A stretch of DNA of 64,000 nucleotides from NCBI RefSeq assembly GCF_001194135.2, contig NC_068994.1, forward strand, positions 22,048,500 through 22,112,499, in the 5' to 3' direction. Source of the stretch: Octopus bimaculoides (taxonomy: Eukaryota). The notes beneath the pieces are model-generated. The model was not told where the DNA came from. It saw nothing but the letters and a program-made list of their open reading frames with translations, and did no database searches. Position 1 is the stretch's first letter; each line of letters starts with the position of its first letter. This document shows, piece after piece, positions 23,011 through 48,390 of the stretch. A program made the position numbers and the translations under genes.

Positions 23011-23044
<34 letters not shown>

Positions 23045-24986: not shown

Positions 24987-25022
<36 letters not shown>

Positions 25023-25439: not shown

Positions 25440-26110
25440 AGATGATGAGTGTGCTCATATGGGAGTGACCCAAGACCTTAGTTTGCGCATGTGTGAGCTG
25501 CACAAATGTTATGCAACAATAGTGGAAGAATTCAGCCTGCATTCATTGTCCTACAGCCTTAGCACAGGCCGATTCCTCTGACACACCACTCTGAATAACA
25601 TTACAAGGGGCCTCAATGAGGCTCACTTTCCATCTCAACTAGAGCCAGTAGGTCTTGACCATGGGAACAGTAAGTGCCCCAACAGAATCACCCATTTCCC
25701 ATTCGAGGGATGTAGATACTTAGTCTGGGATGTGATGTGCAGTGACACATTCTCTGATTCCAACTGTGCAGCATTCACTGCAAACCCAGGTGTTATCACC
25801 TGTGATGCAGAGGAGAGAAAGATCAACAAATACAAGGTCCTGACCAGCTGCTACCAGTTTGTGCCGGTCACCATCAAGATGTTAAGTGTTCTCAGACCCT
25901 GTACTACCAATTTCCTCCACAAAATAGGGATAATGTTGGCCCATCTGAGAAATGAGCTCCATGAAGTGGGATGGCTACTGCAGGGTGTGTTGCTGGCCAT
26001 TCTCTACAGCAATGCCATCGTGGTTATTATTGCAGGGGCATGGCTGAGCACACCATTTGTTCCAGCATGTGTGGCCCATCAACGCTCTTCTCCATCTTCT
26101 GCTGCTTTAC
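25440..26110 (+). mobile_element. Restriction-like-endonuclease (CRE-like) non-LTR retrotransposon 3' fragment
   Basis: PSQLEPVGL...YLVWDVMCSDTF...AEERKINKY...YQFVPV matches the RLE C-terminal pattern, with an upstream Cys/His knuckle remnant. Confidence 0.75.
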
Positions 26111-26174
26111 CCAACCTTTTTTTGTTTCTTTTCCTTCATAATCTTTCTTTTTTTCTTCCTGCTTCTTTGTACTT

Positions 26175-27178: not shown

Positions 27179-27549
27179 TGTATAATTGACTGTAGAAATA
27201 AAGATTTAAGAAACAAAATTGAAAGAGAACAGACAAAAAAGCTAGCTATCAAATAAAGAACAGGAATTAGCAAAAAAATCAAGATAATAGAGTATCATAT
27301 TACATACAGAACAAGGCCAATAGCAACAAAGTCATGCAAACGGAATGAGTTCAGTGTAGGCATTATATATAAATTAGGGCAGAGAAGGTTTCACAGTATC
27401 ACAAGGAAGATTAGAATGTGAGTTATCTTGTGAGATACATAAATGATTCATACTGCCATACTCTACCTAATATCCAATAGTGTCAGACTTATACACATAT
27501 GCAGAGAAAAACAACAATTACTGAGACAAAGACATTCCTATTATATTCT

Positions 27550-27895
27550 TTTACTTGTTTCAGTCATTAGACTGCGGTCATGCTGGGGCACTGTCTTGAA
27601 GGATTTAGTTGAACAAATCGACCCCACTACTTTTTTTAAGCCTGGTATTTCTATCAGTCTCTTTTTAATGCACCACTAAGTTACAGGGATGTAAACAAAC
27701 CAACACCAGTTCTCAGAAGTGGTGGGGGTCAATCACAAACACACATAGACTACACACACACACACAAGGAGCTTTTTCAGTTTATATCCATCAAATCCAA
27801 GGCCTTGGTCAGCCCAGGGCTATAGTGGACAACACTTGCCCAAGGTGCCAAGCAGTGGAACAGAATCCAAATCAATGTGGTTAGGAAGTAAGCTG
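27550..27895 (-). mobile_element. SINE family B
   Basis: Homologous to 58410-58795. Confidence 0.8.
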
Positions 27896-28029
27896 CACCT
27901 TTTAATATAATACAGAAGAGAAAAAAAGACAATAACAATAACTGTAGTGGTGGTGGTGGTGGTGGTGGTAGGAGGAGGAGGAGGAGGAGGAGGAGAAGAA
28001 TTGTTAACACACTAGACAAAATTCTTAGC

Positions 28030-28220
28030 AGCATTTTGTCTTTATGCTCTGAGTTCTAATTCCACCAAGGTCAACTCTGCCTTTCATCCTTTCAGGGTTG
28101 ATGAAATAAGTACCAGCTGCATACCAAAGTTGATGAAACAAGTGCCTGTTGCATACCAAGGTTGATGTAATCAACAAGCTTCCTCCCACTAAAATTTCAG
28201 GCCTTAAGCTTATAATAGAA
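28030..28220 (+). mobile_element. SINE family A, ending at the Tx1 LINE 5' junction
   Basis: GAGTTCTAATTCC B-box, GCCTTTCATCCTTTCAGGG core, ends ...ATAGAA. Confidence 0.8.
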
Positions 28221-31200
28221 CACCACCTTCACCAGCACTACCACTTACATCAATAGACACAAACAACACATATCTTGTGACACATCTTAGAGACAAAACA
28301 GACATCACAATAGAAGATTTTGTCTTCTCAATGCAAAACACAGCACCACCACAAATACAAATTCTAAAAGCCACACAAAACATATACAACACCATAAAAA
28401 CAAACTTTCCAGAAGCTGTTGGGTCATTTGAGAGAAACCTCTGTAAACAACTTTACCAAAACCTTGTGGAAATACCAACACCAAACAAGAAGGGGACCAC
28501 CCCACCAGAAAACAATGGTAAGTAGAGCTCTTCTCCATCCTAAATATTTATTATTTTTAGCATGGTCATGCTCAGAATCGGTAGTATGAATGTCAGGGGC
28601 CTTGGGTAACCTCTTAAACGACCTGAGGTCCATCAGTGTAGATGGAGCAGCCATTAGTGAAACCAGGCTTTCTGACCCACGGGACTTCATGGCCCTTTTC
28701 GATGGATATGAAATTTTCCTATCTCTGTATCGGCCAGGAGGTGGTAGTGGTGGTACCGTGGTGCTTTTCCGGAAAGGCCTGGATCTGAAAATAAAAGCAA
28801 TCTTCCTGGATCCAGAAAGTAAGATGGTGGTCTTAGATGTGAACAGCAGTGACGGCGGTGCCTTCAGACTGGTGGCTGCCTATGCTCCAACAGGGGTAGG
28901 GCAGTCAGATTACTTCAAGTATCTGGAGGTTTTCCTGGCAATGTCTCAGACTTTAGTGCTACTAGGGGATTGGAACACTATCTTAGAGGAATGTTTCGAT
29001 CATGTGGGAGTCTCTGATAAGAGATGCGGGTGCAAAAGCTTCACAAACCTGCTCAGACGTTTTCAATTGTCTGACAGGTACCAACTAGATAACCCGATTG
29101 TGCCAATGTAGACTTAAACAAATTGCATCGGGTCATCTAGATCGTATTTAGATAGAGTTTTTTGTAAGCCAGCAGATAAAGACAGTATAGGTTATCCACA
29201 ATTTCATATAGTCGGTTACACAGACCACAAATTTGTGATCTGTACAATCGACTTAGATAGGCTCCATAGGCAGGGTCCCAGTTAGTGGAAGCTGAAAACA
29301 TCGTTATTGGCATACCAAGCTTACAGAGACCAGATTAGTCTTTTAGTGAAGAGAGTGTTGACAGGGACAATCGTCAACTACAACTGGTGGTTTATTCTTA
29401 AAACGGCAATTAGAGTAGAATCAAATAGGTTTAGTAAGGCATTAGCAGTAAAGAGAAATAAAATAGAGGAAGATTCAGTTAGAAAGTTAGATGAGGTGCT
29501 TAGGACAGGCATCACAACCGACATGTTGACGGCAAAGTTGAACCTTGACCAATTTTTTGACGCCAAACATGAAGGCTGCATTGTCAGAGTTAAGGCACAT
29601 CTACTAAGCAGGGAGGGGACTAAGACCACTTGATGGGCCCAAGTGGCAGAGGCAAAATGTGGCAACAAAGCCACCATTAGGTCTTTAGTGGACCAGAACG
29701 GGTGCAAGGTATTTGAACCAAAGCAGATGTGTGCGGCCTTTCAGCAGCACCTTGCTCGACTGTTTGGAACGAGTGATAGTATGGGTAACAGGAGAGACTT
29801 TGGTGTGTACTTGGATGGCCTGCTGCAACTCTCAGTCAGCAAGGCAGAGTGCTGCAAAAGACCAATAACAGCCTGGGAAGTACAGGAAGCGATGAAAAGC
29901 TGCACAAGAGGCAGATCACCGGGTTTGGATGGTCTGCCCTATGAGCTTTATAGTTCAATGCCAGACTTGTTTGCGGGCCTCTTAGCAGACGTATAGCTCA
30001 AGTGGCAACAAAATGGGAGAATCCCCACTTTTGTTTGTCGAGAGCTGGTGGCACTGCTGAGAAAGGACCGAAACAAGAGGGATATTATAAAAAATTTTAG
30101 GTCCATCACTCTGCTCAATGCGGAGTCAAAGATTTTGGCCAAGGTGTTAGCCAAGAGGTTGGTGCTTGTTGTGGACAAGCTGATTGGCAAGGTGCAAACA
30201 TGTGTCATCCCAACCAGGACTATTTGTGACAACCTCCACCTCATGCACTACATCATAGAGAGGGTGGGTAACAATGCTGGCATGGGTGGAGTTTTGATCA
30301 ATTTAGATCAATTTAAAGCCTTTGATCAGGTCAACCATCAATACTTGGCAGCTGTTCTCAGAGCTGCCAGTTTCAGTCCGGTCTTCTATGGTTGGATTGG
30401 TGCTTTGTACAGCGGCATCCGCTCAGGTGAATGGTCACCATTCAGAACCATACAGCATCTTGTACTCAGTCCAACAAGGGTGCCCTCTCTCTTCTTTTCT
30501 GTATGTACTAATACTTGAGCCACTACTGTGGAAGTTGGAGGTACTGAGGGGTGTTCTGCAAGATTTAGGGTGTGGGAGAAGCATGTCTGCTTACGCTGAT
30601 GACATCACCATGATAGTGTCAAGCTACAGGCATGTAGACCTGATTGGCAACACACAACAAGAATATGAAGCAGTGACAGAAGCAAAAATGAACACAGAAA
30701 AATCAGTGGGCTTGCAACTTGGCACCTGGAGAAGCAAGCCAATGCCATCCAACAATGTCGTCAGGCACTGGACAGACGGTTTGGTTAAAAAATTGCTCAG
30801 GGTCTGGTTCAGTCTGGATCTCCAGGTGCAGAAAAACTGGGATGAGGTGGTGAGCATCCATCATCTATTACTGCTTGATCATCGTCCCTTGCTTCATTTG
30901 CTGGTTGACCAAGCTGGTGCACTTACTCTTTCGCTTTCCGTGGAAGGGGCATGTTCCACTGGTCAGGTGCTCAATCTGCTGTCATCAGCCTCTGAATGGA
31001 GGGGTGGGTATGCTGTGGTTGCTGATGTGCAGAAATGTACTCAGGCTATGGCATCTCCACCATTTTCTGGATGGTGAGCAGGTGTGGTTGCTGTTTGTCA
31101 GACTCGCTCTTCCACAGCTCGTCTCTTTGACTGAGCTGCAATCCTGGATTAGGTGTAGACCAAGGAAGGGTGCTTGGCACCTTGAGTGCCGTTGAGCACT

Positions 31201-32065
31201 CACAGCCCTCAGCCAGGCAGGCAATGCGATCAGTAGTAGTTTCACCCTAGTGTTCTATAGAGGGTTAGTGGAGGAAAAGTGTGACATCATTCTCAGGTAA
31301 ACTCTAGGCATCAATGAGGATCAACTTACTGGTCTGTTCTGGAGAACTTTCAGGCCAGGGTCTATCGTTAACTTCCAGAAATCCCTCACCTGGCAGTGCT
31401 ACTGATGGGTGCTGCTCATTTGGGATAAACTTTCCAGGTACAGAAGTGCTGTCAGCCAGACTTGCCCGAGGTGCGCTCAAAGTGATGAAACTGTTCTGCA
31501 TGCACTTGTCCAGTGCCTGAGCATTGCTGACCTGTGGGTTTATGTTGAACAGCTGCTGTTGTGTGTAGGACAGATCCAGCTATCGGCTGAATCCATAGTG
31601 AAGATTGCCCTGCCGGCCTCCTTTAACAGGGAGGGGCAGGCAACCTTCATTTGTCTGGTGGCTGTAGCAAAAGAGGTAGTACGGTGGACTTGTTTGAAAG
31701 TCAGACACTTTCCTCTTTGGCCAAACTCTCATCAACTTTTTCAAGTTTCACTTGAAAAGGAAAGTGAGGGTGGAGAGGGAGGTGTTGTCTTCTAGCAAAT
31801 TTATTGAAAGGTGGGTGGATGTTGGAAAAATGGCCAGTGTGAATGGACCAATTCTGAGAATACACCTGTACAAAGTATAAAAGGAGAACAGTTCTTGCCC
31901 TGTTGGTCAGGTACCCGTGGCTTTTGTGGGGTTTACCACAAGTAATCATTAAAGCACCTCCCCCTATTGGGAGTTTTACTTGTTACCTCTTTCTTGTTAT
32001 TTAATGTTTACACAAATGTGGAAACCCTTTATATCGTCTTTTCATTATTATTATTATTATTATTA
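28221..32065 (+). mobile_element. Tx1/L1-clade LINE: ORF1 C-terminus plus disrupted ORF2 (APE, RT, Cys motif), (ATT)n end
   Basis: MNVRGL, ISET, AYAP, LGDWN endonuclease motifs; SPGLDGLPYELY, SITLLNAESKILAK, QGCPLS, YADD, CPRC..SDETVLH; several stops and frameshifts. Confidence 0.93.
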
Positions 32066-32079
32066 CTTTTATAATAATT

Positions 32080-32410
32080 AATTCTGTCTAATTTTGGCAC
32101 AAGGCCAGCAATTTTAGGGGGAGAGAGATGGCTACTTGACTGAACAACAACAACATGCTAAATATAAGACAAAAAACAGTAAAGCAAATACAAAGCAATT
32201 ATAATTATGTTAATAATTCTTTCTAATTTTGGTACAAAGCCAATTGTAGGGGAAGGGGTGAGTTGATTATCTTGACCCAGTGCTCAATAGGTACTTATTT
32301 AATTGACACTGAAAGGATGAAAGGCATCTGAATTCAAAATGTAAATCCAGAAGAAAAGCTGCTAAGCATTTTGTCCAACATGCTAACAATTCTGCCAGAT
32401 CACTGCATTT
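32080..32410 (-). mobile_element. SINE family A (one partial plus one near-full copy)
   Basis: TTTTGGCACAAGGCCAGC ends and AGGATGAAAGGC core in reverse. Confidence 0.75.
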
Positions 32411-33026
32411 AAAATTATACTAATAATTCAAAGAATAATGAAATTATAAACAATAACAAGAAATGTAAAATTTAATCAATAAAACAATATAGATAAGACC
32501 AATAAAAACAACCACTAAGATAACAATAGTTACTGTAATGATATATATCATTATATTATAGTAAGAACATTGTTTCAGTAAATGTAAGAGTTACAGAATG
32601 AATAAACTGTATACATAATAGTACTTTGGTTCATATTGTGTGCGTACATGATTTGCTGCACGTTACTCTACACAGGATCTTTACATCTAAATTGAGAAAA
32701 GGAAGAGCAACAAAAAAAAAAGAAAGAAAGAAAAGAAAGGAGGCATAAATTATAGAAGCTCATAAATTTCCATAAATTTACATGACATGTGAATAAACCA
32801 GAATCTATCCCACTTGTTAATGGTTCACTGACAACTATGAACTCTGAAAAATGTAGTAACCACTTTATTTAATGTCTGCAATTAATAATTCATTCATTTC
32901 ACTTATTTAGTAAGTATTAATTACCAGCAATAAGATCTGGAAATGCCATGTGTGCAAAACACATAAATATACATAAATATATATATGAGTAAATGCGCTA
33001 AGCAGTGTTTACATATAATCACAATA

Positions 33027-33325
33027 TAGGTTAGTTGAAATATGTTTGTCACTACTAGTGCAAATCAGTCAATGTGTTGGCTGAATTATATATAAAGCTA
33101 TAAGCTTTGTCAGTTCGTTGAGGGTTACCCCTCTCAGGTACATCTGATTGACAAGTCAACAAACTCGAAACATCAATGTCTCAGATTCCCGAGAGAGGGT
33201 GACACTGAACGAAAGGGGTGTTTTCACACCTTTTTACCATAAGAGAGAATTTTTTCTCCATGGCAACTGCAGTGTATTTGCCTTTAGAAGTTGAGATGTG
33301 AGACAAACATATTTCAACTAACCTA
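33027..33325. mobile_element. MITE with perfect 24-bp TIRs
   Basis: TAGGTTAGTTGAAATATGTTTGTC (33027-33050) and its exact reverse complement (33302-33325). Confidence 0.8.
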
Positions 33326-33614
33326 AATTATATATATATATAAGTATTGTTACCATTATATACAGTAATAATGAGGCGGCTAGCAAGTTTCTACCTATAC
33401 AGGTACAAAAACTGTAAGAATGTAGTTGTGTAAAGCCAGAACAATCTGAGATAGTAAAAAGTAGACTACCAAAAGAGAATGAAACAGAACAAAGTTGCAG
33501 TTTTACCTTGTATTTCTATATTTTGGAGTGAAGACCCCTTCTTCAGGACAAAGAGAAAAAAACAGTAGTTGGAAAAGGTTGCTGCTTAGAGCAACAAACT
33601 TATATATATATGTT

Positions 33615-33925
33615 GTTGTTGTTGGCACTCCATCGCTTACAACGTTGAGGGTTCCAGTTGATCCGATCAACGGAACAGCTTGCCCGTGAAATTAACGTGC
33701 AAGTGGCTGAGCACTCCACAGACATGTGTACCCTTAACGTAGTTCTCGGGGACATTCAGCGTGACATAGTGTGACAAGGCTGACCCTTTGAATTACAGGC
33801 ACAACAGAAACAGGAAGTAAGAGTGAGAGAAAGTTGTGGTGAAAGAGTACAGCAGGGTTCGCCACCATCCCCTGCCGGAGCCTCGCGGAGCTTTTAGGTG
33901 TTTTCGCTCAATAAACACTCACAGA
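33615..33925 (-). mobile_element. GC-rich interspersed repeat (SINE-like)
   Basis: CpG-rich block bounded by microsatellites; resembles a recalled abundant octopus repeat, not verified. Confidence 0.5.
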
Positions 33926-33974
33926 TATATATATATATATATCTATATATATATATATATTTATATATTTATAT

Positions 33975-34370
33975 ACAGGGTGCAGCAAAATGATAACACA
34001 GTTGTAGGTTTAATAAAAGTAAAATAGAGTAAAGAACAAAAAATGTGTTTTATTTCCGAAATGTACATATAATGCCACTTCGTTTCAATAGGTGCAACTT
34101 GTGACATTTTGTTTCATTTTACTTTCAGTTGCCAATATATATATTGGACGGGCGAGCATCATGCTTTCATTGTGGAGACATGAAGAACAACGAATCCGTA
34201 TGTGCAACACGAAGAGCATTCCGTGTGCACTTAAGGCTTGGTAGCTATGATCTTGTACCTACTCGGGGTTCATACTTCATTTGGGGTCCATACTTCTTCG
34301 AAGAAGACAATGTTACAGTGACTGTGAACTCTGTCAGACAGGACCTTGATGTCTGCCATGATGCAGGAAA
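33975..34370 (+). mobile_element. Tc1/mariner-superfamily relic
   Basis: TA-CAGGGTG terminus; ATRRAFRVH...VPTR and GPYFFEE..VTVNS motifs. Confidence 0.65.
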
Positions 34371-34719
34371 GTATACTAGTCCTTATATATTTAATACTCT
34401 ATATTTAATACTCAATATTTCATATATTCAATAAAACATTCAATACTTCATTTCATTTTACTATTTATATTATATATTCCATATTGATAGGTGTATGCAC
34501 TTGTATATGCCAGATAGTGGCAGAGGTGAGAGAATATATCAAACATAAATTAAAAACAGAACACAAAGGACATTGCAGTACATGTGTTTCAAGCTTTATA
34601 AACCTATTATAATGGATAATACTAAGTGTACTTTTTCTTTTGTGATGTAATCTTTGGACTAAAAATTGATGGCGGCTGAAGAGAGCTTTAAACCGTGCTG
34701 AACAACTTTTAATAAACAA

Positions 34720-34915
34720 AGTTGTACAATCTGAAGTAAGAAAACAACATAGAAACCTTGTGACAGTATGGCTTGACGATAAGAAGGCATTCGACTATCG
34801 CTCGTTCATGGCTGTTGAAGTGCCTACATCTGGTAAAAGTACCTACACTCTAATTGCTGCTATAGAGAGACTCACAAAGACATGGACAACAATTCTCACC
34901 CTTCCAAATGAGAAC
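34720..34915 (+). mobile_element. R4/Dong-like RT fragment
   Basis: RNLVTVWLDDKKAFD / SWLLKCLHLVKVP / LIAAIERLTKTWTTIL across two frameshifts. Confidence 0.65.
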
Positions 34916-35104
34916 AGACAAAGTTCACTGACAAAGTTCTGTGATGCAGCAAAGAACTTTGTCAGTGAACAGGCCGCGGTCTCAAAGTGACGAAAATATT
35001 TTGACAAATTAAATTTAAATGTTGAAGTGAATCTAACGGTTTTGTGTGTTATTTTAAATGGCTTATAAACACCTTCCATGCTGCAATTGTATATATATAT
35101 ATAT

Positions 35105-35286
35105 NNNNNNNNNNNNNNNNNNNNNNNNNNNNNNNNNNNNNNNNNNNNNNNNNNNNNNNNNNNNNNNNNNNNNNNNNNNNNNNNNNNNNNNNNNNNNNNN
35201 NNNNNNNNNNNNNNNNNNNNNNNNNNNNNNNNNNNNNNNNNNNNNNNNNNNNNNNNNNNNNNNNNNNNNNNNNNNNNNNNNNNNNN
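35105..35286. other. Assembly gap
   Basis: 182 N flanked by (TA)n. Confidence 1.
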
Positions 35287-35429
35287 TATATATACACATA
35301 CATGCATACACATATATATACACACACACATATACACACACACACACACATATATACACACACACATATATATACATACACACACACACACGTATAGTGA
35401 GAATTTACAAAAAAAACAAAAGAGGAAGA

Positions 35430-37045
35430 TGGGTGTGTAAACAGCAAACAGATGTATTAGTTTAATGCTCGGGAAGTGAGAAAGTCTTTTTTCGCTTTTG
35501 AGCCTATGCTCTTCAACAAAAAGGAACACTGGAATAAACAGAGCAAGAGAGGAGAGGTGGGTAGGAGGAAGAAGGTGAGAGAGGAAGAAAGGAAAGGAGG
35601 CGGGTAAGATGAAGAGGGGAGGAGAGTCAATCCCATATGGCATAAAGGAGCAAAGAAAGAAGATTAATCCCTGTTCACGGTGAAGATGGAAGTCCGGATG
35701 GACCCTGTACAAAGACAATCCAAACACAGACAGGTGTTGTAAAGAATGACCAGTAGAGTGGAAATGGCATGAGACCGGGGTGTCGTTGCCAAGTCTGATG
35801 TCTCGGAGGTGTTCCGTGAACTGGTCAGCCAAGTGGCATCCCGTTTGACCGATGTATAGAGAAGGACAGAGAGAGCAGGAGATGCAGTAGATGACGCTGC
35901 TAGAAGTGCAGGTGAAGGAATCAGTGATATGTTAGGGTCGATGATGGGTACCTGTGAGGAAGGTGATGTTGGAGAGGTAAGGGCAAGTGTGGCAGTNNNN
36001 NNNNNNNNNNNNNNNNNNNNNNNNNNNNNNNNNNNNNNNNNNNNNNNNNNNNNNNNNNNNNNNNNNNNNNNNNNNNNNNNNNNNNNNNNNNNNNNNNNNN
36101 NNNNNNNNNNNNNNNNNNNNNNNNNNNNNNNNNNNNNNNNNNNNNNNNNNNNNNNNNNNNNNNNNNNNNNNNNNNNNNNNNNNNNNNNNNNNNNNNNNNN
36201 NNNNNNNNNNNNNNNNNNNNNNNNNNNNNNNNNNNNNNNTGAAGGGGTCGGAAGGCTCGGAGAATGGTGCGCTGGAGAGGTAAGATGGTGGGGTGGTAGG
36301 TGAGGGGAAATGGGAGGCGGGAGACAGCAGGGCAGGTTCAGGGGAAGAGAGCAGATGCACGGTCCACGGAACGTGCTCTGGCAAGGGCAGTGTGGATAGT
36401 GGTGAGGGGATATCCATGTAGGATGAAGTGGTAAGCCATGAGTTGAGACTGAGTCTCAAAGTCATGGTCATCACTGCAGAGCCTGCATAGATGAAGGAAT
36501 TGGGAATAGGGGATGGAGAGCTTGGTGTGTTTAGAGTAGGAGGGGGAGAAGCTGAGGTATGAGTGTGAGTCTGTGTGTTTGTAGTGGATGGAGGTGGTGA
36601 GAGTGGAGTGATGAATGCTGACCAAAATGTCGAGAAAGGCAATGGAAGTGTCGGAAATAGTGCAGGAGAAGTGGAGGGCAGGATGGAAAGATTTGACAAA
36701 AGAGAGGAAGGAGTCTAGATGTTCATGGGAGAGTGAGGTTGCACTGAGGTCGTCAATATAACGACCATATAGTTCGGGAGTGGGACCAGTGAAACTTGAG
36801 AATATTTGGGCCTCAACGTAGCCTATGGCCATTCCTGAGATATGCTGGTAAAAATCACCCGCAAACAAGAAGCAGTTAAGTGAGAGGACAAGTTCAGCTA
36901 GACAAAGGAATGTGGATGTGTCAGGTTGGAGGTTGGGTCGAAGGTCAAGGAAATGTTGGAGTGCATGCAGCCCCTCATGGTGAGGGATCACTGTGTATAG
37001 GCTCCTGATGTCAAGAGAGAAGAGATGTTTAGAGGGGCCAGGAAG
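35430..37045 (-). mobile_element. Penelope-like element (Neptune/Poseidon-type) with RT and GIY-YIG endonuclease; contains a gap
   Basis: ORF 36338-36991 has YGRYIDD, FLDI, SIPYSQF; downstream VIYCISCSLCPSLYIGQTG...EHLRDIR...PVSCHF. Confidence 0.9.
35997..36239. other. Assembly gap inside the Penelope-like element
   Basis: 243 N. Confidence 1.
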
Positions 37046-37574
37046 GAAGGAGAAATATATACATACACATACGTATATATATAGTCGTATTGAGAGAGAT
37101 GGCTTTGTACCAAGTGATGAGAGGTTAGAGTATGAATAGAAGAACAGAAACAGGTGTCTTGCAGAGGAAGGGAAAATGGCTAATCCAGTTAGAAAGAGAG
37201 AGTGGGGGGAGAGGAGAGGAAAGTGAAAGAAGATAAAGATGTGTCGGTGGAGATATACAAGTGAAATAGTTCAGAGGACTGGATAAGATGATTCGGCAGG
37301 TAAGTTTGCAAGTGTACAAAAGTGGGAGCTAGAAAAAGGACACAGTGAATGGTGAACACAGGTATCAGAACTAGCAAAATAATGTAGTTGATTGCATAAT
37401 CACAAATGTTACACTCCTGTACTGAACGCTTTGGGTGTTACTGTAATGGCACAAACCAGAAGAAATACTCATAACAGATATGCACATATTTCAAGATTGT
37501 AAAAAATCAAGTTCTAATGCAGAATATACAAAGATCCTTCAAACTTAACAAATCCAATTCACCAATATACATAC

Positions 37575-38086
37575 CATGGTGTAGAATCATGAGAACAAAA
37601 TTCCTCTTGTGTCAAATGGTAACAGCCTTTCCTTGTTGATGGAGTTGCTTTCCATTCAAATGAATGACAATGATAGATGAAGCAAACTAACTTTTGATTA
37701 CGAATTTTCTGCTGAAGTTTGCAATATATCTTAGCAGTGCGATTGCAAGCTTGATATTGAACAAAGGCTATTGATGACATAAGTTTCTGAGCAAGTATGG
37801 TTTGCTCTAAATGGTTAATACATTTCATACTAATCATATGAGTCTTTTTTGCAAGCCAGTAAATGCTGTATGCTGCATTGTGGTGCCTGAAATACCTTGG
37901 TACTGGTCTGGTTTTGTGAGCAAAAATATTTAACAATGTTTTCTTAAGAGTGTATTTGGTTTTAAATGGATGTGGCATTGTGATACAACATTCTTGAATT
38001 TTCTTAAGAGTATGAAGAAGAAAACGTCTCCGCTTTACTCTTGAGAGTGACTTACGATCAATTTTGATTTTGCGACACCGAGTCAT
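37575..38086 (-). CDS. Candidate alternative first coding exon (170 codons, basic) for a PX-less isoform
   Basis: A-rich ATG context with an in-frame TAA two codons upstream; long open frame in AT-rich DNA; ATG|gtatgt donor in phase 2, matching exon 20320. Confidence 0.5.
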
Positions 38087-41000
38087 TTTTTAAAAATATA
38101 TTATTTGGAGGGAAAGTGGACTTTGTATCATATAACCAATTACATGCAGGTTTTCAAAAATGGTATATTAACACATGTAATTACATTGGAAGAGACATTT
38201 AGAAGTACATTAAGGTATTTATACATGTGTATATATATTAAAAAAAATATATATAGATAGATATATTCAGACATACTATTCATACATACAAACTAAATTA
38301 ATGAAGTATATATAAGTAAACTGGTGCATGTGATTATCTGAAGATATATGTTTGCATATGCATATATATGCAAGCATTTATTTACAGATATATGCTGTGT
38401 GTGTATGTGTGTGCACATTTACAGTTGTTTATAAAGAAGTACGTAAGAAAATATAAGGGTGAGCGTGTGTGCATCTGTTGAGGTAAATAAATATTTTCAA
38501 GAGTTAGTTAAATCTAAATACATATTTGTGAACGTTTTTGTGTACCCATACACATGAATGTGTGTGAGATATGACCATGTAGAAATCCAAATATCATTCA
38601 GTAAATATAGCAATATAATTGAAATAGAAAATCTCACAGTGAAACATGAACAGCCATATCATAATCAGATCAAACTGAGATTTGATTCTTGATTATTTAA
38701 AATAAAATGTTATAATCTATAAGTCAATTCTCTTTTTGCTTTCTTTTTCTAAATACTTATTTCTTTCTGTCTAGTTCCAATTCCTTGAAACCTACTTAAT
38801 TCAAAGAATTTAAGCACTCTATCTACTAACAGTGCAGGTATGGATGTGTTTAATCTGAAACACTGGATATTACCACAAAGCAAACATAAAAGTTGAAATA
38901 CCAGTGATGTGAATTTGGAGTGTGAGTATAATTTTTATCTCCACATCCCTATTCACAAATTCAAAGTTGATGTGGGTGTTGTGGGTAATGTTTATGTAGA
39001 GACACTATTAATGTTGGTATTGACTGAAGTAGTTTGGGAAGTGACAGTGTTTGTGGTGACATGATGATGTTGATATTTGAGATAGTGGCATTAATATTAG
39101 TGAAAATGTTGTTGGTGATGATGTTCATAAGGTTTAATGAGATTAAGGCTTAAGTACTTTGAAAGCAAAAAAGGGTGGACAAAAACTTAAATATATTGAT
39201 TATCCAGGTGTGAACAGGGACTAATATGGTTTTATTTACCACCTGTATCTGAATGGTATCTCATTTTTGACTAAGGTAGTTTTATTATATTTGTGCTTGC
39301 ATTTATAACTGAAAGTTTCTTATAAGAAGCTTGTAATTAGATGCATGTGTTTATTTGTTTGCATTTGAACAGAAAAACATTAGTGTATAAAAGTGTGTGG
39401 TAATACCTGTATACAAAAATATGTGCAAATGTGTAAGAACATTAATGTTAATGAGTCTATATGCCTGCGTGTAATTCAAATGAGTGTGTATTTTTCTTTA
39501 AGATAGTCTAATAAAATGGACTTATACTCAGAGCATTTTAAAAAATCCCCGTTAACTGGGGAGTAGTGATAATTTAGTGAAGTCAAATTGGAATACATCG
39601 ATGTGTGTAAGGCAGATTATGTATGACCTTAAGAATCTGTGTATGACTGGTTGAATATATGTAGAGGCAGTTCCATACAATAAAATACATTAAAATATAA
39701 CAGAGTTAACTATTAGTAAAGACTAATAAAATTCCTGTGCAACAATAAACCACCCTGATAGTTTCCTGATAAGAGATGATTCAGCAATCCTGGTCAGAGA
39801 TTCAGCTGGTTGATTCTAAGGGTAGAGTAAATAAGTTCAGCCCAAGTGTATCTCAGATGTTTTTGAGTCTGTTACATGCATTTTTATGAAACAAAGTAGA
39901 CTTCTCTTTCAGATTTTTATATGATACAAATTTCTATCAAAACTTTTGACAGATATGGTCTTCTTTCTGAAAAGTTAATTGAAGGTGTAAGCAGTATCCT
40001 CAATGCAAAACCAAATGGCAATTTTTTCCATCATTGGTAACTATCAAGGAAAAAACATCTGTCACATTTTCATACATGTAATTTTTGCTGAAATTGTTAG
40101 TTTTGCAATAAATAATGATAATGATGACAAAAATCAAAAGTTAATATCACTTTTCAGCTAAAATCCTCAACAAATTGCAGTGTTTTAACTGGTAGCATCA
40201 CATTGTGAAATATAGGTGAATAAATGAAAACCTATCTGCAGCTTTTGATGAAAGAAAGGTAGTTAGGTATATAATTGATGTATTTATGAGTGAGGGTGTA
40301 TAATTACATAAAAGTGGCAATTTCTGTTAATCTATTTTGTATATCAAAGTGCCAAAATAATTATCATTAAGGTATGCATCACTCTCACTTCAATTTCTTT
40401 TAGTGTGTGTGTTATGTATGAGTATATGCATGTTTGTATGTGTGCATATATATGTATGTATATAAAAAAAACACAAAAATTTCTAACTACTACTAATCCC
40501 TCATGATGTGTTGGACAGTGAAGGGAGAGACATACAGAGGGAGTGAGAGTGAACGAGGTCAAATGTTACTATGTATGTGTATATGTGTATGCATATTTAT
40601 ACTGAAGTTTGCAATAATGACTGACACGGCTTTATAAGATCTGCACCAGCACGGAATTTTAAGCAATAACAATCCCCATTCTACTGATTGCTGTGACTAC
40701 CAGTATTGTTGCCACTATAATCATTATTGCAACCTAAATACCACATTACAACTACTACTACATCATTATTCCCTCACTATAGTCATACAGCCTCCCTCGT
40801 GGCTTTAAAACAACTTTCTACCAGGAAACCCTATATTGTATTAACTTGACCAACTAGGAATATCAGCCAAATCTCTCTTAAATCAGTCCACTGTCAAAGA
40901 AAAATAAAAGACAAACATTAATGATAATGTAATCATAGATACCTCACCTTTCTGTATATATATAAAAACAAAAAAGACAATTACACAAAATGCTTCTGTC

Positions 41001-41494
41001 AGTTTTCTCAGTCCCCAACAACTACACACAAGACAAACACTCTCTTGCAGACATATTCACAAAGGAAAGGTTTGACTCTTGGTATTGCACTGGGTAATGT
41101 CTACATCTTTAGTTAGCTTTTCAGTAAGATGACCATAACTATCAGAAGATAGGAATTTATAAGAAGTAAAAGTCTGAAAGAGAAGTCTATTTTGTTTCAT
41201 AATAATGCATATAATTCAAAAACATCTGTGATACATTAAAACTTTAAATTCTTTTTTTAAGAAAAATACTGAGCTCTGGAAAAATGCATTAAACTTTTCC
41301 AGCTCATCTTTCTCAAAAGAGGAGCAATATTAGAGAAAGTGAGCTTTGTGAACAGAATAAAGGGAATCATGTGCAGTAAGAAAATGACTAAGACTGCCAA
41401 CATTATATTGTGCTAATAAATAAGGAAAAACAGAAAGAAACACAAAAGCTTTCATAAAAATATTCACACTAAAATATATTAAATACTTTTCTCC

Positions 41495-41668
41495 TAAAGT
41501 CTTTAGCATTTAAACTAGCCATAGCCAACCTCTAGCACTTATCATTCTAAAAATAAACACTCATGTCATTGACATGTCAAAGCTACTAGATAATGCATGA
41601 CTAATTCATATTAATGTAAATAAGTATGACATTTGACAGAGAAATATGAATGCTAAAGGGTTAAAAAG
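41495..41668. mobile_element. piggyBac-like MITE
   Basis: CTTTAGCATT left end and ATGCTAAAGGGTTAA right end. Confidence 0.55.
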
Positions 41669-42151
41669 GTTTTTTTTTTTCATCTTTCATATTCCTGATT
41701 ATGATATATCAACAAATATCAAACATTATTCTTCTGAGACATAGAAGCAGAGTTTTCAATTTCAAGAGAGTAGATTTGAACACAAATAGTACACTCCTTG
41801 ATTGCAAAGAAAGTAACAGGATTACTGTTAGAGGAATTGAACTCATGACCCAGTTCAGCAACACTCCCAGTATCAAGTTAGATTCTACACACTAATTCAG
41901 TGTCAGTTGCATGTATTATGATGTATTATTAGGTAGAGTTAGAAAGAGAGGGAGAGTAAAGAAAAAAGAAAAATGACTCAGCTATTACATCTGTTTTAAG
42001 CATTATTATAATCACTCCATTATGTCAAAGCAACCATGTAGTAATTCTTCTTGCCAAGATGTTGATCTACTGCCATTTGTCAGACATCACAAGTGACAAG
42101 TCTTTTTTAATATAATCCGTAGATTATCTGGACTGCTTAAGAGAACTGCTT

Positions 42152-42152
<1 letters not shown>

Positions 42153-42216
<64 letters not shown>
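42153..42216. repeat. (TG)n microsatellite; similar dinucleotide runs at ~3718, 7400, 8308, 17195, 24990, 59462, 61659, 62981
   Basis: Read directly. Confidence 0.95.
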
Positions 42217-42218
<2 letters not shown>

Positions 42219-43789
42219 CCTGTACGCATACCTATTCTACATAAAGTGATGGTAAATCCAGAATTTTAATTAACAATAATTTGATTCCTAGTTGAGCTAT
42301 TTTCATCTTTTTTCTGATTGTTATTAAATTTTGTGCAAAGACATATCTCTATATAAAAACAAATTATATGTAGTGACAAGCAACACCAGTCTGAGTTTTC
42401 TAGAATAATCAAGATATTGATAAAATATTTGATTATAACCAACAGCAAGTCTGATTTTTTTTTTTTAATTTCATGTAACTTGGCCACCTTCTTCAATACC
42501 TTCAGTTGAGGGGGTCTTGCCTTGTCTTGCAAGTTACTTAGTAACCCTCATTAGTGCCAGTACCACATTAAAAGCACCCAATACATACTTAAAATACATA
42601 GCATTAGGAAGGGCATCAAGCAATAGAAACCATGCCAAGCTTGGTGCAGTCCTCTGGCTCACCAGCAACTAATGAATCATCTAACTCATGCCAGCATGGA
42701 AAACAAATGTTAAAAGATGATAGTGACAACAAAGAAGAGAAAGATGTATACCACTCAATAATAGTCTTTTGCCCTTGAAAAAGTCAAGAAACTGTAACAC
42801 AACAAAGCCTTTGATCACATGTGACATGAGAATGTCCTACTTAGGTTACCAGCCTAAGGGTTTTATCCATCTCCCTCAACTGAAGGACAAGAAATTTTCT
42901 ATCAACTCACATCATAACAGTGTATACTGACATTGCTCTCTCTCCAGCCAATATTATCAACTTTGAAGTACTTTGAGGTTTTGGTTAAGACACCCACAAT
43001 ATTTCTGTTGCCAGTTCTAAAGCACAACTCTATACAAATGATTCCTTGGGGTTGATTCATTTGACTAAAAGAAATTTTTCAAGGTGGTGTCCCAGCATGG
43101 CCACAGTCTAATGACTAAAACAAGTAAAAGATAAAAGAAACAAGCTGAGCTATCTACTACAGTGCTATCCTAAGAATCCAGGGAAAGTTTTCTCTAACCA
43201 ATGCATAACAAATTGTGAAAGAGTTCATCATGAGACCCCTTCTCTTTTCTTCCAGACACCAGTTTATTTAACCTAGAGTAATGCTTTAAATATACATATA
43301 TCATCATCATCATCATCATCATTATTTAACATCTATGTTCCATACAGGCATTGGTTGGACAGTTTGACAGGATCTGATGGGCCCAAGGACTGCATTATGC
43401 TCCAATGTCTACTGGGCATGGCTTCCACAAATGGATGCCCTTTCTAATGTCAGCTACTTTACAGTGTGCCTTTTTTTTATGCCACTAGCACAAGTGAATT
43501 CACCTTGCAGCTTACAAGACTATAAACACTGAGCACTTGGGGCAACTTTATTCTAGGAGAATAAGGAATAGGTAAAGTGTGGAAGGTAAAGGTAAAGTGT
43601 GAGAGAAAAGGGCCAGAGCAGAACAGGCTTCATGCTGTAGAGGAGCTACATGACTACTGACGTTTCAGAAAAGAGGGTTGGCATGGACCTTCCACTTTCA
43701 GCATATGGGGTAGATAAGGATGAGAGGTGCCAGGAGTGATTGGAGGAGTAGGGAATATTTAATAGTATAGATTAGCAGAAAAGAAATGA

Positions 43790-44300
43790 TGATACAACCC
43801 TGGCTAGAGAGTTACTGTTGGCAGGAAATGAGTGGCAGTAGGATTTAGTTCCAAACCTACTGGAAAGGGCCAGAAAGTGGTTGTCAGACAATTTCTACAA
43901 CTTCACCAGACCCACATGCTGGTCACCTAATCCCCTGATTATAATCCTATCGATAACTACGTGTGGGACACAGTTGAGAAAGACACCAACCATTCTGCCT
44001 GCAACACCAAAACTGAGCTGGTAGACAAGATCAAGGAGGTGTCTGAAAATCTTCCCAGGGCACAGTGAGGAATGCATGTGCCAAGTTCTGGAGCCATCTT
44101 GAGGGTGTGGTGGAAACTGAGGGTGGCGACTTTGGGTAAGCTATTATTTTCCAGCCATAATGGGCTTGATATTTTTTGATTCTTTAAAATACACTTTTTT
44201 GGGGGGATAGGAGACCGTTTTCTTTCCCTTTTATGGAAACTGTCAAATTTAGCCATACACTGAGTATGTGTAGTCAATAGTGTTTACAACACTAATACTG
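43790..44300 (+). mobile_element. Tc1/mariner transposase C-terminal relic
   Basis: W-PNSPDYNPIDNYVW...NTKTELVDKIK...NAC..F...LE.VVE.EGG motif. Confidence 0.75.
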
Positions 44301-44509
44301 CTTTTAATTCATATGTATGCATCATCGTGGCATACCAGCAAATGACTTTTACACTATTTGAATCAGGTAAGTCACAAAAATGGTGAAATATTGGTAGTCA
44401 TCACTCCTGGATGGGACTGGAGGCAAGTTGTCTCACCTATGACTGTGGGGTTGATAATATATACATATATGCATGTGTTGTGTATATGTGTGTGTATGTT
44501 TGTATGACT

Positions 44510-44710
44510 ATACTACTGGTGCTATTATTATTAAGGTGGTGAGTTTACATTCTGAGTTCAAATTCCACCACAGTCAACTTTGCCTTTCATCCTTTTGGGG
44601 TCAATAAAATAAGTCCCAGTGAAAGACTGGGGTCGATGTAATTGACTAGCTCTCCCTCCACCCCCAAAAAATTTCAGACCTTGTGCCTGTAGTAGAAAGG
44701 ATTATTATTA
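44510..44710 (+). mobile_element. SINE family A
   Basis: AAGGTGGTGAG...GAGTTCAAATTCC...GTAGAAAGGATTATT. Confidence 0.85.
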
Positions 44711-45319
44711 TTCATATTGTTCTTATTGTTGCTATCATCATCATCATTATTATCATTTATTCCAATGTGTCTTGACACTACTTATATGCTCAAGGCCATA
44801 TACTACCAATTCCATTCAGTACTTAAAGTCACACCTTGACACCTAGTTCATTTCTTTTCTACCCTTTTTCCCCCCAATGCCATCCAAATTCTGGACCTTC
44901 CCAATTTGATACTCTTTGTCCTTCCCTTTAGGTTTTGTATGCAAACTTACAGATACAACCTCCCATTTCCTTTCAATACTATTCACTCATGCATCTTCCT
45001 TTCTTCTCCTTCCTAACTACTTCATTTTATATATTCTTCACTTCTCTCTCTCTCTCCCTCCCCTCTCTCTCTCTCTCTCTTTCACTCCTCTTATTCCTTT
45101 CTTTCTCCTCCTCTATATACATATTCATCTTCCTAACTTAGTAGCCAAGTTACTGTTCTGATCATATACACTGAAATATTTCGATTAACTGCTTCATATT
45201 TTGAAATGTTTTAACTGAGGAAGATGCTATGTAATAGACACATTTCTTATTATATATTACGTAGACCTGAAACGTACATATTAGATGACTTCAAAATAAC
45301 ATCATTTGGTTTACTTCAT

Positions 45320-47560
45320 TATCACAACTTAAACAACTCAATGCCAATAGAAACCAGATTCCAGATTCCACTTACGCAGTAATAATTATTACTAACAAGT
45401 AATATGCACTTGGAAAGATGCATCATTACACATGTCAATGCCCAGGTCACACACTGATTTTGATTCAAGGATTGCAATCTCTCGTGGGTTAGTGTGACAG
45501 TAGTGCCAGGCTTGAACTTTTCCAGCATTAAACTGCACGTTATTTTCCTCAGCTCACCTGTATACTGAGTCCAACTCCTGTTGCAGGTGTACAACATCTC
45601 CGGGAGTTCTGTATCCTCTGAGAGACTTTTGTATTATCTGCATAGCTAGCAAGGGTAGGTATCTGAGCAGCTATGAGCATGTCTGAGAGGGCCACTCTGA
45701 ATAGCAGTGGCCCTGTAAAAAAAAAACAATCACTATTGTGTTTCCTTTGAGGTGGCTCCACTGGCCACCACTACCTAACTTCTATTTATTAAAAAGTGGT
45801 ATAGCCATCCTCCAAGTTCTCTGCCAAGATCATGTAGCTTGTGACATATCATACTATGGTTGACTTTATCAAAGGCTTTTGCAAAGTCGAGATATACCAC
45901 ATTCAAATTCAAGTTGTTGATTAACTGCTTTAACACCCAGTTGTAGTGCTGCAAGAGATGTGTCAGGCAGCTTCTATCTGGTCAAAAACATGCTGAATGT
46001 TAGTCAGTAAGTCATTCTCTTCAAGGAATGCAATTAGTTTCCTTTGGACTATTCATTCCATGACTTTACTGACATGTGAGGTCAGAGAAATAGGCTTATA
46101 ATTTTTAGCATCTGCTCTGCTTACTCCTTTATGGATAGAGCATATTATTCCCTCCTTCAATTTGCTTGGGATATTACCACTTGCATGATCTGATAAAGAT
46201 TGCTGAGAATCCATCAGGGCCAACAGCTGAGTTTGCATCTACCTCATTTATAGCCAGTATTACATCTCCTTCTTTTATGTCAGTGTAATCAATTATTACC
46301 GCCTTCCTTGTTATAGGTATAGTGGCAACAGAACTCTGCTGGTTCGTTCATTTTCCAGTGTCTTAATGGGGTAGTGAAAATACTTTTGAACTGTCTATTC
46401 AGTATTTCACTTATCCTCAATGTGTTTCTTGTGAGGGAGACATCCTGTTGGATGAAGGGCCCTATCTTGTAATGTACTGAGGCCATTTTTTGGCAAAGTT
46501 AAAGAGAGCTTTAGGGTTTGACTTAATAGTTTTTATAACCCTGGCTTCTGTATTTGCTCTCTTTTTATGGGACTGTTGCAAATTTTTTTCTCAATCTCCA
46601 CCAGTGTTGTTTTCAAGCAAGTCTTTTCCCCATTTTCATTGTTCAAGCAGTTTACAATTTTTGCTTGATGTTTCATAAAAATTTTCCTCTGTCTAGATAT
46701 CTCATTCTTGTGTGTGTTGGACTTGTGCTCTGGGACAAATTTGTCACATATGGCTTCCATTATGGACATGAAATGTTGAAGTTTTATATCAATGTCTGGT
46801 GTGGAGAAAATTTAGGCCAATCCTGTTTGAGTATCTCTTTCTGATTCAATTTCCAGTTTGCTTTATGAAAGTTCAGATTGGAGAGACTGTGGGTGCTTCT
46901 TAAAGGCTGCATGTCTGCAGCTTGTTTTAGTCCATACATAATCAGCTCTATTATATTGTGATCCAAGACTAGTGATTGTGTCACTTTCACATTATGGATG
47001 ATATCCATATTGTTTGTGAAGCAGAGATCTGGTATATTATTTTCCCTGGTTGGTTGGAGCAAAATTTTCTCCATGAATGAAGCATTGTTGAGGTGGAGCA
47101 GGGACTCCACCTGTGCTTGTTGGCAATGTGTCATTCCTGAGAGCATGGGGCCCTCAGGTCACCCCACATTGGAGAGGCTCAACTCACTTACAAGGAACAC
47201 ATTCATGTTTCGCTCCAGTTTGGTGAGAACTATTTTTGTGAGACAATCTTCAAACTTGTCAGTGTGATTTGGAGCATCTGGTGGGCAATATGCGATACAT
47301 AAAACAATGTCAAGTTGTCTTATGAGTACAATTTCACTATCATATACTGAATTTGAATATGATCCACACAGATGTATACTGCAACTTCACCATGTCTCCT
47401 TTCTCCTCTGTTCATTCATAATACAACATACTTTGGTTTGTGCATCGCTGCATCCCCTATATCAGATCTAAGATGTGTTTTCACAAGTGCTATACATAGA
47501 GCTTGATTGCATGCAATGAGGTCTTTCAGGAAAGATTTTGGTTTGGTTGTTGAGGAGCAA
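45320..47560 (-). mobile_element. Decayed CR1/L2-type LINE (APE plus RT)
   Basis: QPTRENNIPDLCFTN, DHNII, IHKG...NYKPISLTSHVSKVME, GPLLF...YADNTK motifs. Confidence 0.88.
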
Positions 47561-48295
47561 CAGATCTCTGATATTCAGTAGAAATATCAGTGTATATATA
47601 TATGTGTATTTATACACACACACACACATATACATGTATATATACACATACACACACACATAAATATAAATTTTGAATTACATCATAACCACTTTCTTAG
47701 CTGAACCAAAGAGACAGTGTTTCCATTAGTTTTTCACTTGATGATACTATGTGCTGGTGACAATTCCTTACTGAAATGTTACTTTCAATTTTCTTTCTGG
47801 TGACAGGAGTTGGGATGTGAATTCAGAAAAGATGGAGTTGTAGCATATACTACAACATATCTACTGGTATGCTTTACCAATTCTATCTCTCCACCACCTT
47901 GGGTTGGTACTTTATTTATTATCACTCAAAAGAGTGACCTTTTGTGTTCTAAAGTTAGAGCACTGTGAGTCAGAACAACTACAACAATAATACTACTGAA
48001 TCAGGACTGACCTTGGGTTAAGATCAATAACAACATGTACTCAAGGACACTTGAGATAAACATGACACAAGAGCATCATTTTCATCTCTTTTTGACTCAT
48101 ATTCAAAATCTGCCAGGGTGAAAGTTATATTTCACTCCTCTGTAATCAATAAAGTGGTGACTACTTAATCTTTTATTATCAATTCCTGCAAAAATTTGCA
48201 GTCTTATATCAATGTTAGGAATAATTATTATTATTATTATGACTGCTAAAAAGTATTAATGTTTCAGCAAAAGAATGAAATTCTTGTATACTAAC

Positions 48296-48390
48296 GTTTG
48301 TGTCACTGCAGCAATATCTTCTGCTGATGACTGGAAAAATGTTAGAACTGCATGGCACTGTGAAATTTTGGGTTCAAGTTTAGTGAGCAG
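48296..48390 (-). CDS. SH3PXD2A: Coding exon: end of PX domain
   Basis: ctcttccacag|CTG CTC...CAA AC|gttagt; LLTKLEPKISQCHAVLTFFQSSAEDIAAVTQ resembles Tks5 LPPHISQCDEVFRFF; 95 nt, phase 0 to 2. Confidence 0.93.

What the first reader, a model, noticed from the sequence alone, without database searches (positions are those of the whole stretch)
37575..38086. Candidate alternative first exon replacing the PX domain with a 170-aa polybasic N-terminus
Seen: in the 28-kb PX-to-SH3-1 intron there is a 175-codon gene-sense ORF with no recognisable TE motif. It has an A-rich ATG context and an in-frame TAA two codons upstream. A good donor (ATG|gtatgt) sits just before its stop, in phase 2, which joins exon 20320 in frame (...HDSTP-C-KKQDLNT...). 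The peptide is K/R-rich (RKIKIDRKSLSRVKRRR). Known: mammalian Tks5 has PX-less short isoforms from internal promoters. Inference: this lineage may have a PX-less isoform with a lineage-specific basic, possibly membrane-binding, N-terminus.
Basis: partly seen in the sequence, partly recalled or inferred. Interest (0 to 1): 0.72.

Follow-up and report, generated by a model that had tools for sequence, protein, structure and literature searches.

The report
Conserved coding exon inside Tks5-like intron
The open reading frame in the big intron of this octopus-like Tks4/5 scaffold gene is a real protein-coding exon kept by selection in two distant animal lineages, and it ends in a conserved splice donor, but whether it joins the SH3 exons to make a PX-less isoform still needs transcript data.

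Summary
A 175-codon ATG ORF lies on the minus strand at 38086..37559. A TAA sits two codons upstream, and an ATG|GTATGT donor in phase 2 joins exon 20320 in frame.

ORF length alone is weak evidence: 7 of 200 random windows reach it. Conservation is what decides.
- **Octopod relative.** It keeps the ORF at 93% DNA identity with no indels, against 77-83% in gapped flanks. dN/dS is 0.34.
- **Distant lineage of unknown taxon.** It has a homologue of 31-34% identity (E 1.4e-8 against 1.84 billion proteins). The start codon is the same and dN/dS is 0.12-0.19. There are 14 synonymous changes against 6.5 expected (P=0.0006). A top-0.2% donor also sits in phase 2.

Constraint stops at the donor, and the tail after it drifts and frameshifts. 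No transposable-element, Pfam, PDB or Rfam match was found, and the sequence is single-copy.

So this is a genuine 5' coding exon of an undescribed basic, Cys/His-rich protein, and it is not lineage-specific. My estimates:
- about 0.45 that it splices to the SH3 exons;
- about 0.40 that it belongs to a separate nested gene;
- the remainder for other readings.

Membrane binding was not tested.

The parts
37575..38086 (-). Candidate 5' coding exon: ATG at 38086, 170 codons plus 2 nt (phase 2).
   Evidence: ORF shown. It is 93.3% identical with no indel to the octopod relative L001, against 77-83% in the flanks. dN/dS is 0.34. The synonymous excess has P of 0.02-0.05. A distant homologue exists, P0002.
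37569..37574 (-). Splice-donor candidate GTATGT (ATG|GTATGT).
   Evidence: Its position-weight score is at the 97.6th percentile of all GTs on this strand, and it is the best of the 24 GTs in the ORF. L001 has AAG|GTATGT (99.5th percentile) and the second lineage has AAG|GTGGGT (99.8th percentile). All are in phase 2.
37559..37574 (-). Read-through tail (W)YVYW plus the TGA stop. It is intronic if the donor is used.
   Evidence: The stop moves by two codons in L001. In the second lineage the tail has a 37-nt frameshifting deletion in one species.
37583..37696 (-). Most conserved segment, residues 131-168: QKLVCFIYHCHSFEWKATPSTRKGCYHLTQEEFCSHDS, a Cys/His motif. Zinc binding is an inference only.
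   Evidence: Alignment A2. tblastx of second-lineage contigs hits exactly 37696..37583 with E 6e-15. About half of the conserved residues use different codons.
38024..38080 (-). Basic cluster, residues 3-21: RCRKIKIDRKSLSRVKRRR.
   Evidence: The basic character is kept in P0002 (RQKRHQVHKKR...KAKRKTR).
38087..38195 (-). Conserved block upstream of the ATG, a candidate 5'UTR or core promoter. It contains the palindrome ATGTAATTACAT at 38175..38186.
   Evidence: It is 90.8% identical to L001, against 82.7% further upstream, and is bounded by a 48-nt indel.
20178..20320 (-). First SH3-1 exon of the host gene, the proposed splice target. The acceptor AG is at 20321-20322.
   Evidence: Sequence. 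SH3_1 scores E 6.5e-13 on the spliced exons.
48296..48390 (-). Last PX exon of the host gene. Its donor AC|gttagt is in phase 2, the same phase as the candidate exon.
   Evidence: PX scores 23.1 bits, above the cutoff, with exons ~55239-55318, 48624-48701 and 48296-48390.

Best explanation
The ORF is a genuine 5' coding exon that has been kept by selection. It consists of its own ATG, 170 codons and a phase-2 splice donor. It lies in the sense orientation in the 28-kb intron between the PX exons and the first SH3 exon of a Tks4/5-like (SH3PXD2) gene.

The most likely reading is that a transcript starts just upstream, near 38100-38200. It would use the donor at 37575|37574 and splice to the next phase-compatible acceptor, at 20320. 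The product would be a PX-less scaffold isoform. Its N-terminus would be a 170-aa basic module (pI 10) ending in a conserved Cys/His motif (C-x3-HCH-x13-C-x-H-x6-C-x-H).

**Shown:** coding constraint, a conserved start, a conserved donor and a compatible phase.

**Inferred:** the transcription start, the actual junction, zinc binding, and any targeting role of the basic clusters, whether nuclear, nucleic-acid or lipid.
For: **Octopod relative.** The octopod contigs (P0001, L001-L003) are collinear with window 38525..37082. Identity is 93.3% with no indel in the ORF, against 77-83% with 13 gap openings in the flanks. NG86 dN/dS is 0.34. There are 14 synonymous changes against about 9 expected from spectrum-matched permutation (P 0.02-0.05).

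**Second lineage.**
- P0002 matches at E 1.4e-8 in an exhaustive search of 1.84 billion representatives. Pairwise BLASTP gives 4e-17.
- The ATG and length are the same, 175 codons to the donor.
- Of 48 identical degenerate residues, 25 use different codons, so the conservation is at protein level.
- Within that lineage dN/dS is 0.12-0.19, and pS is at least the flank divergence. Differences by codon position are 3/2/11, 1/4/7 and 2/4/8.
- Of 22 substitutions, 14 are synonymous against 6.5 expected (P=0.0006).

**Donor.** The donor scores at the 97.6th, 99.5th and 99.8th percentile in the three sequences. It is always in phase 2 and always sits where constraint ends. The tail beyond it differs in length (5, 7 and 27 codons) and carries a 37-nt frameshifting deletion in one species.

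**Fit to the host gene.** Phase 2 is what exon 20320 needs, as does the canonical PX exon. No AATAAA or ATTAAA occurs in the 560 nt after the ORF. Mammalian PX-less Tks5 isoforms start in the equivalent intron (PMC4178035).
Against: - No transcript, junction read or TSS evidence could be obtained.
- No protein in the databases joins this peptide to SH3 domains. This is uninformative, because those databases hold no cephalopod Tks5.
- Phase compatibility with exon 20320 has a 1-in-3 chance.
- The acceptor is 17 kb away, and unknown exons could lie between.
- It is not known whether the second-lineage homologue lies in an SH3PXD2 intron. Its contigs are at most 1.3 kb.
- All related contigs are unspliced genomic DNA.
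- The structure model is useless (pLDDT 37.5), so domain claims rest on sequence pattern alone.
Confidence: 0.45

Rival explanations
1. It is an independent nested gene with several exons. The ORF would be the first coding exon of a separate, undescribed gene lying inside the host intron on the same strand. The conserved donor would splice to that gene's own downstream exon(s), and the transcript would end before exon 20320.
For: All the evidence for coding constraint and a conserved donor fits this reading equally well. The homologue in a distant lineage shows a protein module that could stand on its own. The phase match with exon 20320 could be chance, at 1 in 3.
Against: No second shared coding segment appears between the second-lineage contigs (up to 400 nt past the donor) and the window. 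No poly(A) signal occurs in the 560 nt after the ORF. A same-strand transcript inside an intron would meet the strong host acceptor at 20320 unless it terminates first.
Confidence: 0.3
2. It is a single-exon nested gene. The 175-aa ORF would be translated as it stands, stopping at 37559, as a small basic Cys/His-rich protein. The GT at its end would be a coincidence.
For: The ORF is complete, from ATG to stop, in every species seen. All related contigs are unspliced.
Against: The best donor-like GT of the whole ORF sits at the end of constraint, in the same phase, in both lineages. The tail after it varies in length and is frameshifted by a 37-nt deletion in one species whose remaining sequence has dN/dS 0.12-0.19. 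No poly(A) signal occurs within 560 nt.
Confidence: 0.1
3. It is not a functional coding sequence. It would be a chance ORF in a conserved non-coding element, or the relic of a transposable element, for example part of the neighbouring RT-bearing fragment.
For: ORF length alone is only borderline (7 of 200 random windows). An RT-like fragment lies 520 nt downstream on the same strand. No known domain matches.
Against: Synonymous excess is seen in two independent lineages. Synonymous codon turnover occurs at conserved residues. There is one contig per sequencing run, no second copy in the window, and only two clusters among 1.84 billion representatives. No terminal repeats are present. Nothing matched in viral or metagenome contigs. 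The relative's contig leaves the alignment at the microsatellite that borders the RT fragment. No Rfam family reaches threshold.
Confidence: 0.1

Closest known systems
Mammalian Tks5beta and Tks5short (PX-less isoforms of SH3PXD2A from alternative transcription starts in introns V and VII; PMC4178035)
   Same: The host gene has the same architecture, PX followed by SH3 domains. The candidate start lies in the intron between the last PX exon and the first SH3 exon. The unique N-terminal sequence would be joined in frame to the SH3 exons.
   Different: In mouse the unique part is short and is a 5' extension of exon 6 (start codon 29 bp from the exon). Here it is a separate 512-nt exon 17 kb upstream, encoding 170 residues under purifying selection with a homologue in a distant lineage. 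No transcript evidence exists here.
Same-strand nested genes in introns
   Same: The exon has a complete ATG-to-stop ORF inside a host intron, its own conserved upstream block, and conservation that does not depend on the host exons.
   Different: Constraint ends at a consensus donor rather than at the stop. The tail is unconstrained, and no poly(A) signal follows.
Taxonomically restricted (orphan) protein families with Cys/His zinc-binding motifs and basic nuclear-localisation-like clusters
   Same: There is no Pfam, PDB or viral match. It is a small basic protein with eight conserved Cys/His positions.
   Different: Zinc binding and localisation are untested. The family here consists of only two sequence clusters.

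Membership tests
Protein-coding sequence under purifying selection | Excess of synonymous over non-synonymous change, with an open frame and no indels across species. | tested here: met
   Octopod pair: dN/dS 0.34, P 0.02-0.05. Second lineage: dN/dS 0.12-0.19, 14 synonymous changes against 6.5 expected, P=0.0006. Between lineages, 25 of 48 conserved degenerate residues use different codons.
Alternative first coding exon giving a PX-less Tks5-type isoform | Its own conserved start codon downstream of the PX exons, in the sense orientation. | tested here: met
   The ATG aligns in both lineages. An upstream in-frame stop is present in every species, and the upstream frame is not conserved. The position in the intron is shown.
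Alternative first coding exon giving a PX-less Tks5-type isoform | A splice donor whose phase matches the first SH3 exon. | tested here: met
   The donor is in phase 2 and exon 20320 needs phase 2. Donor score is at the 97.6-99.8th percentile and the donor is conserved.
Alternative first coding exon giving a PX-less Tks5-type isoform | Transcripts that start in the intron and join the exon to the SH3 exons. | not testable with these tools
   No cephalopod transcript data were reachable. A database query with the SH3-1 exon peptide found nothing.
Single-exon nested gene | Coding constraint runs to the stop codon, followed by a poly(A) signal. | tested here: not met
   The stop shifts, and the tail is frameshifted by a 37-nt deletion in one species. 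No A[AT]TAAA occurs in the 560 nt downstream.
Transposable-element ORF | Multiple copies, TE protein domains and terminal repeats. | tested here: not met
   There is one copy in the window and one contig per run. Only two clusters appear among 1.84 billion representatives. Pfam gives no hit. No TIR or LTR is present.
Zinc-finger or other known structural family | A match to a known profile or fold. | tested here: not met
   Pfam gives no hit at E up to 10 apart from a stray DUF7299 match at E 0.13. A PDB profile search found nothing. The AlphaFold model has pLDDT 37.5, too poor for a fold search.
Polybasic membrane-binding region | Binding to acidic phospholipids. | not testable with these tools
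   Only the composition is known: pI 10.1 and 34 K+R in 170 residues.

The most novel reading that the evidence does not exclude
An old, undescribed protein module would serve as an alternative N-terminus of the Tks4/5 scaffold. It consists of a basic region plus a CHCH-CHCH-type putative zinc site. It would be shared by cephalopods and a distant lineage, possibly bivalves. Swapping out the phosphoinositide-binding PX domain for it would retarget the five-SH3 scaffold, for example to the nucleus or to nucleic acids. That would make promoter-driven domain swapping in this gene ancient rather than a mammalian feature.
Probability: 0.25. Interest if true: 0.65.

Novelty: new variant of a known kind. 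Interest (0 to 1): 0.48.

Why it matters
Tks4/5 scaffolds are placed on membranes by their PX domain. PX-less isoforms from internal promoters are known only in mammals, where they change invadopodia behaviour.

A conserved 170-residue replacement N-terminus in molluscs would show two things. The PX/no-PX switch would be older and more elaborate than thought. It would also define a new small protein domain with a clear experimental handle.

Even if the exon belongs to a separate nested gene, it is an unannotated, selectively maintained protein family with no match in Pfam, PDB or 1.84 billion representative proteins.

Tried and rejected
- **Rfam** on 36900-38700 gave only sub-threshold hits to TA-rich palindromes.
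- **Pfam and PDB** profile searches gave nothing.
- **AlphaFold** on the 3-sequence alignment gave pLDDT 37.5. I therefore ran no fold search, because the matches would be meaningless.
- **SH3-1 exon query.** A protein-database search with the SH3-1 exon peptide, meant to find annotated isoforms, returned nothing. It showed only that the database lacks cephalopod Tks5.
- **Exact look-up** of the window's ORF found it not on record.
- **Viral and metagenome contig scans** found no relatives.
- **Link to the neighbouring RT-like fragment** was rejected. The relative's contig diverges at the bordering microsatellite, and the second lineage has no RT downstream.
- **Second shared exon.** tblastx of second-lineage contigs against the window found only the ORF.
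- **Naming the source species.** The sequencing runs could not be traced in the literature. The one lead is that ERR3431204, the accession next to ERR3431203, is Mytilus coruscus Illumina WGS. Neighbours of the ERR124/ERR129 runs are PacBio HiFi or Hi-C genomic libraries. The taxon of the second lineage stays unverified.

Full report
**What is at the coordinates**

On the minus strand, an ATG at 38086 opens a 175-codon frame that closes with TGA at 37559-37561.
- The in-frame codons before it read TAA AAA ATG.
- The sequence ACA CCA TG|gtatgt puts a GT donor after 170 codons plus two bases, so the last exon base is 37575.
- The first SH3 exon begins at 20320, after ttccatttccag.
- TG+C then reads HDSTP-C-KKQDLNT, in frame.

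**The host gene**

It placed exons on the minus strand. I then checked them by reading the sequence and by Pfam.
- Exons at about 55239-55318, 48624-48701 and 48296-48390 together score as PX: 23.1 bits against a cutoff of 21.6.
- Exons at 20320-20178 and 17449 onward score as SH3_1, E 6.5e-13.
- Further SH3 exons lie near 14317, 11441 and 229.

The last PX exon ends CAA AC|gttagt in phase 2, the same phase as the candidate donor. The intron 48295..20321 is 27,975 nt long.

**Is the ORF more than chance?**

Length alone does not settle it. Random 64-kb sequences with the window's dinucleotide content reach 176 open codons in 7 of 200 trials. A genome scan would meet many such frames.

**An octopod relative**

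The protein search found one cluster, P0001: 177 aa, 89% identical, from Logan assemblies of five runs (SRR11869384 and neighbours), with one contig per run.
- The 1.55-kb contig is collinear and unspliced with window 38525..37082.
- Identity is 93.3% with no indel from the ATG to the donor.
- It is 90.8% in the 109 nt upstream and 87.8% in the 100 nt after the donor.
- It falls to 77-83%, with 13 gap openings, in the remaining flanks.
- Nei-Gojobori dN/dS is 0.34, with 14 synonymous and 20 non-synonymous differences.
- When the same substitution types are placed at random, about 9 synonymous changes are expected, giving P of 0.02-0.05.

The donor is kept and is improved in the relative (AAG|GTATGT). 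The stop moves by two codons.

**A distant lineage**

An exhaustive HMMER search of 1.84 billion representative proteins found only one further cluster, P0002: 203 aa, E 1.4e-8. Pairwise BLASTP gives 4e-17, with 34% identity over 122 residues.

Its 90% cluster has four members, on genomic contigs L004-L013 from three closely related genomes.
- The ATG aligns with the window's ATG.
- The conserved core is Q-x-LVCFI-x-HCHSFEW-x-AT-x3-RKGCYH...C..DS.
- Between the window and L004, 25 of 48 identical degenerate residues use different codons. The conservation is therefore of the protein, not of the DNA.
- Within this lineage dN/dS is 0.12-0.19, and pS is equal to or above the flank divergence.
- Differences fall 3/2/11, 1/4/7 and 2/4/8 on codon positions 1/2/3.
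- Of 22 inferred substitutions, 14 are synonymous against 6.5 expected (P=0.0006).

The ORF is therefore a real coding sequence. It is not lineage-specific.

**Where the coding constraint ends**

I scored every GT with an approximate metazoan donor matrix, taken from general knowledge.
- The window's donor is at the 97.6th percentile of all GTs on the strand, and it is the best of the 24 GTs in the ORF.
- The octopod relative's donor is at the 99.5th percentile.
- The second lineage has AAG|GTGGGT at the 99.8th percentile.
- All are in phase 2 and lie within a few codons of the last conserved residues.

Beyond the donor the reading frames run for 5, 7 and 27 codons of unrelated sequence. One species of the second lineage has a 37-nt deletion there that shifts the frame. 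No AATAAA or ATTAAA occurs in the 560 nt after the ORF in the window.

Together this favours a spliced 5' exon over a protein that ends at the stop codon.

**What it joins**

The available data cannot show this.
- All related contigs are genomic. The neighbours of the ERR124 and ERR129 runs are PacBio HiFi and Hi-C libraries.
- They are at most 1.6 kb long.
- The protein database holds no cephalopod Tks5, so the absence of a chimeric protein says nothing.

In favour of a junction with exon 20320:
- the exon is in the sense orientation;
- the phase matches, which has a 1-in-3 chance;
- no nearer shared exon was found;
- mouse Tks5beta provides a precedent, since its transcript starts in the intron between the PX exons and the first SH3 exon (PMC4178035).

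Against it stands only the lack of direct evidence and the 17-kb gap, in which unknown exons could lie.

My estimates are:
- about 0.45 for the PX-less isoform;
- about 0.30 for a separate multi-exon nested gene;
- about 0.10 for a single-exon gene;
- about 0.10 for a non-functional sequence;
- the small remainder for readings not listed.

**What the peptide is**

It matches nothing in Pfam, PDB sequences, Rfam, or viral and metagenome contigs. The structure model is unusable, at pLDDT 37.5.

From the sequence, pI is 10.1 and 34 of 170 residues are K or R. The basic clusters at residues 3-21 keep their basic character in the distant homologue.

Eight Cys/His positions are conserved in the last 35 residues. 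The spacing suggests zinc binding, but this is inference. The basic clusters fit a bipartite nuclear-localisation signal at least as well as a membrane anchor.

**Transposable-element origin**

I consider this unlikely.
- There is one copy in the window and one contig per run.
- Only two clusters exist in the whole library.
- There are no terminal repeats.
- There is no TE domain.

An RT-like fragment lies 520 nt downstream on the same strand (36338 to about 37040; RVT_1 E 0.03). It begins at a microsatellite, which is where the relative's contig leaves the alignment. The second lineage has nothing similar after its ORF.

**Taxon of the second lineage**

This is unresolved. ERR3431203 is numbered next to ERR3431204, the Illumina genomic library of Mytilus coruscus. 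The other runs sit among Darwin Tree of Life genomic libraries. A bivalve origin is a lead, not a result.

**Verdict**

"Lineage-specific" is wrong, and "membrane-binding" is untested.

Noticed in passing
window 36338-37082 (minus) and 34843-35832 (minus): A 5'-truncated reverse-transcriptase-like fragment with a YIDD motif; Pfam RVT_1 reaches only E 0.03. It starts at a TA/TG microsatellite. After an N gap comes an ORF whose start (…EHLRDIRLGNDTPVSCHFHSTGHS…) looks by eye like the GIY-YIG end of a Penelope-like element, but Pfam finds nothing.
   Followed up: partly
window 28590-31800 (plus): A frameshifted LINE lies antisense to the host gene. It has an Exo_endo_phos endonuclease (E 1.3e-6) and RVT_1 (E 2.5e-12 and 3.2e-7). 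The local GC rises to 0.43-0.47.
   Followed up: partly
window 16859-16915; L001 1487-1548: A short SINE-like repeat is shared (82%) between the host intron and the 3' end of the octopod relative's contig. It probably explains why that assembly breaks there.
   Followed up: no
window 38175-38186 and about 38140; L004 about 300-360: The conserved block upstream of the ATG holds a perfect 12-nt palindrome, ATGTAATTACAT, and a second CATGTAATT. The second lineage has a 60-nt invariant upstream block with TTAATTAC and an inverted repeat TTGTACC-N9-GGTACAA. These could be homeodomain-type sites or promoter elements, or chance in AT-rich DNA.
   Followed up: no
window 38202-38249: A 48-nt AT-rich insertion relative to the octopod relative carries TATAAATA. 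It marks the upstream edge of the conserved block.
   Followed up: no
window about 22.8 kb, 35.1-35.3 kb and 36.0-36.28 kb: Assembly gaps (618 N in all) sit next to CA/TA microsatellites. One of them interrupts the RT-bearing element.
   Followed up: no
L005-L007 (P0004): One species of the second lineage has small indels upstream that open the frame before the ATG, and a 37-nt deletion after the donor. The gene caller therefore reported a 259-aa product. The extensions are not conserved.
   Followed up: yes
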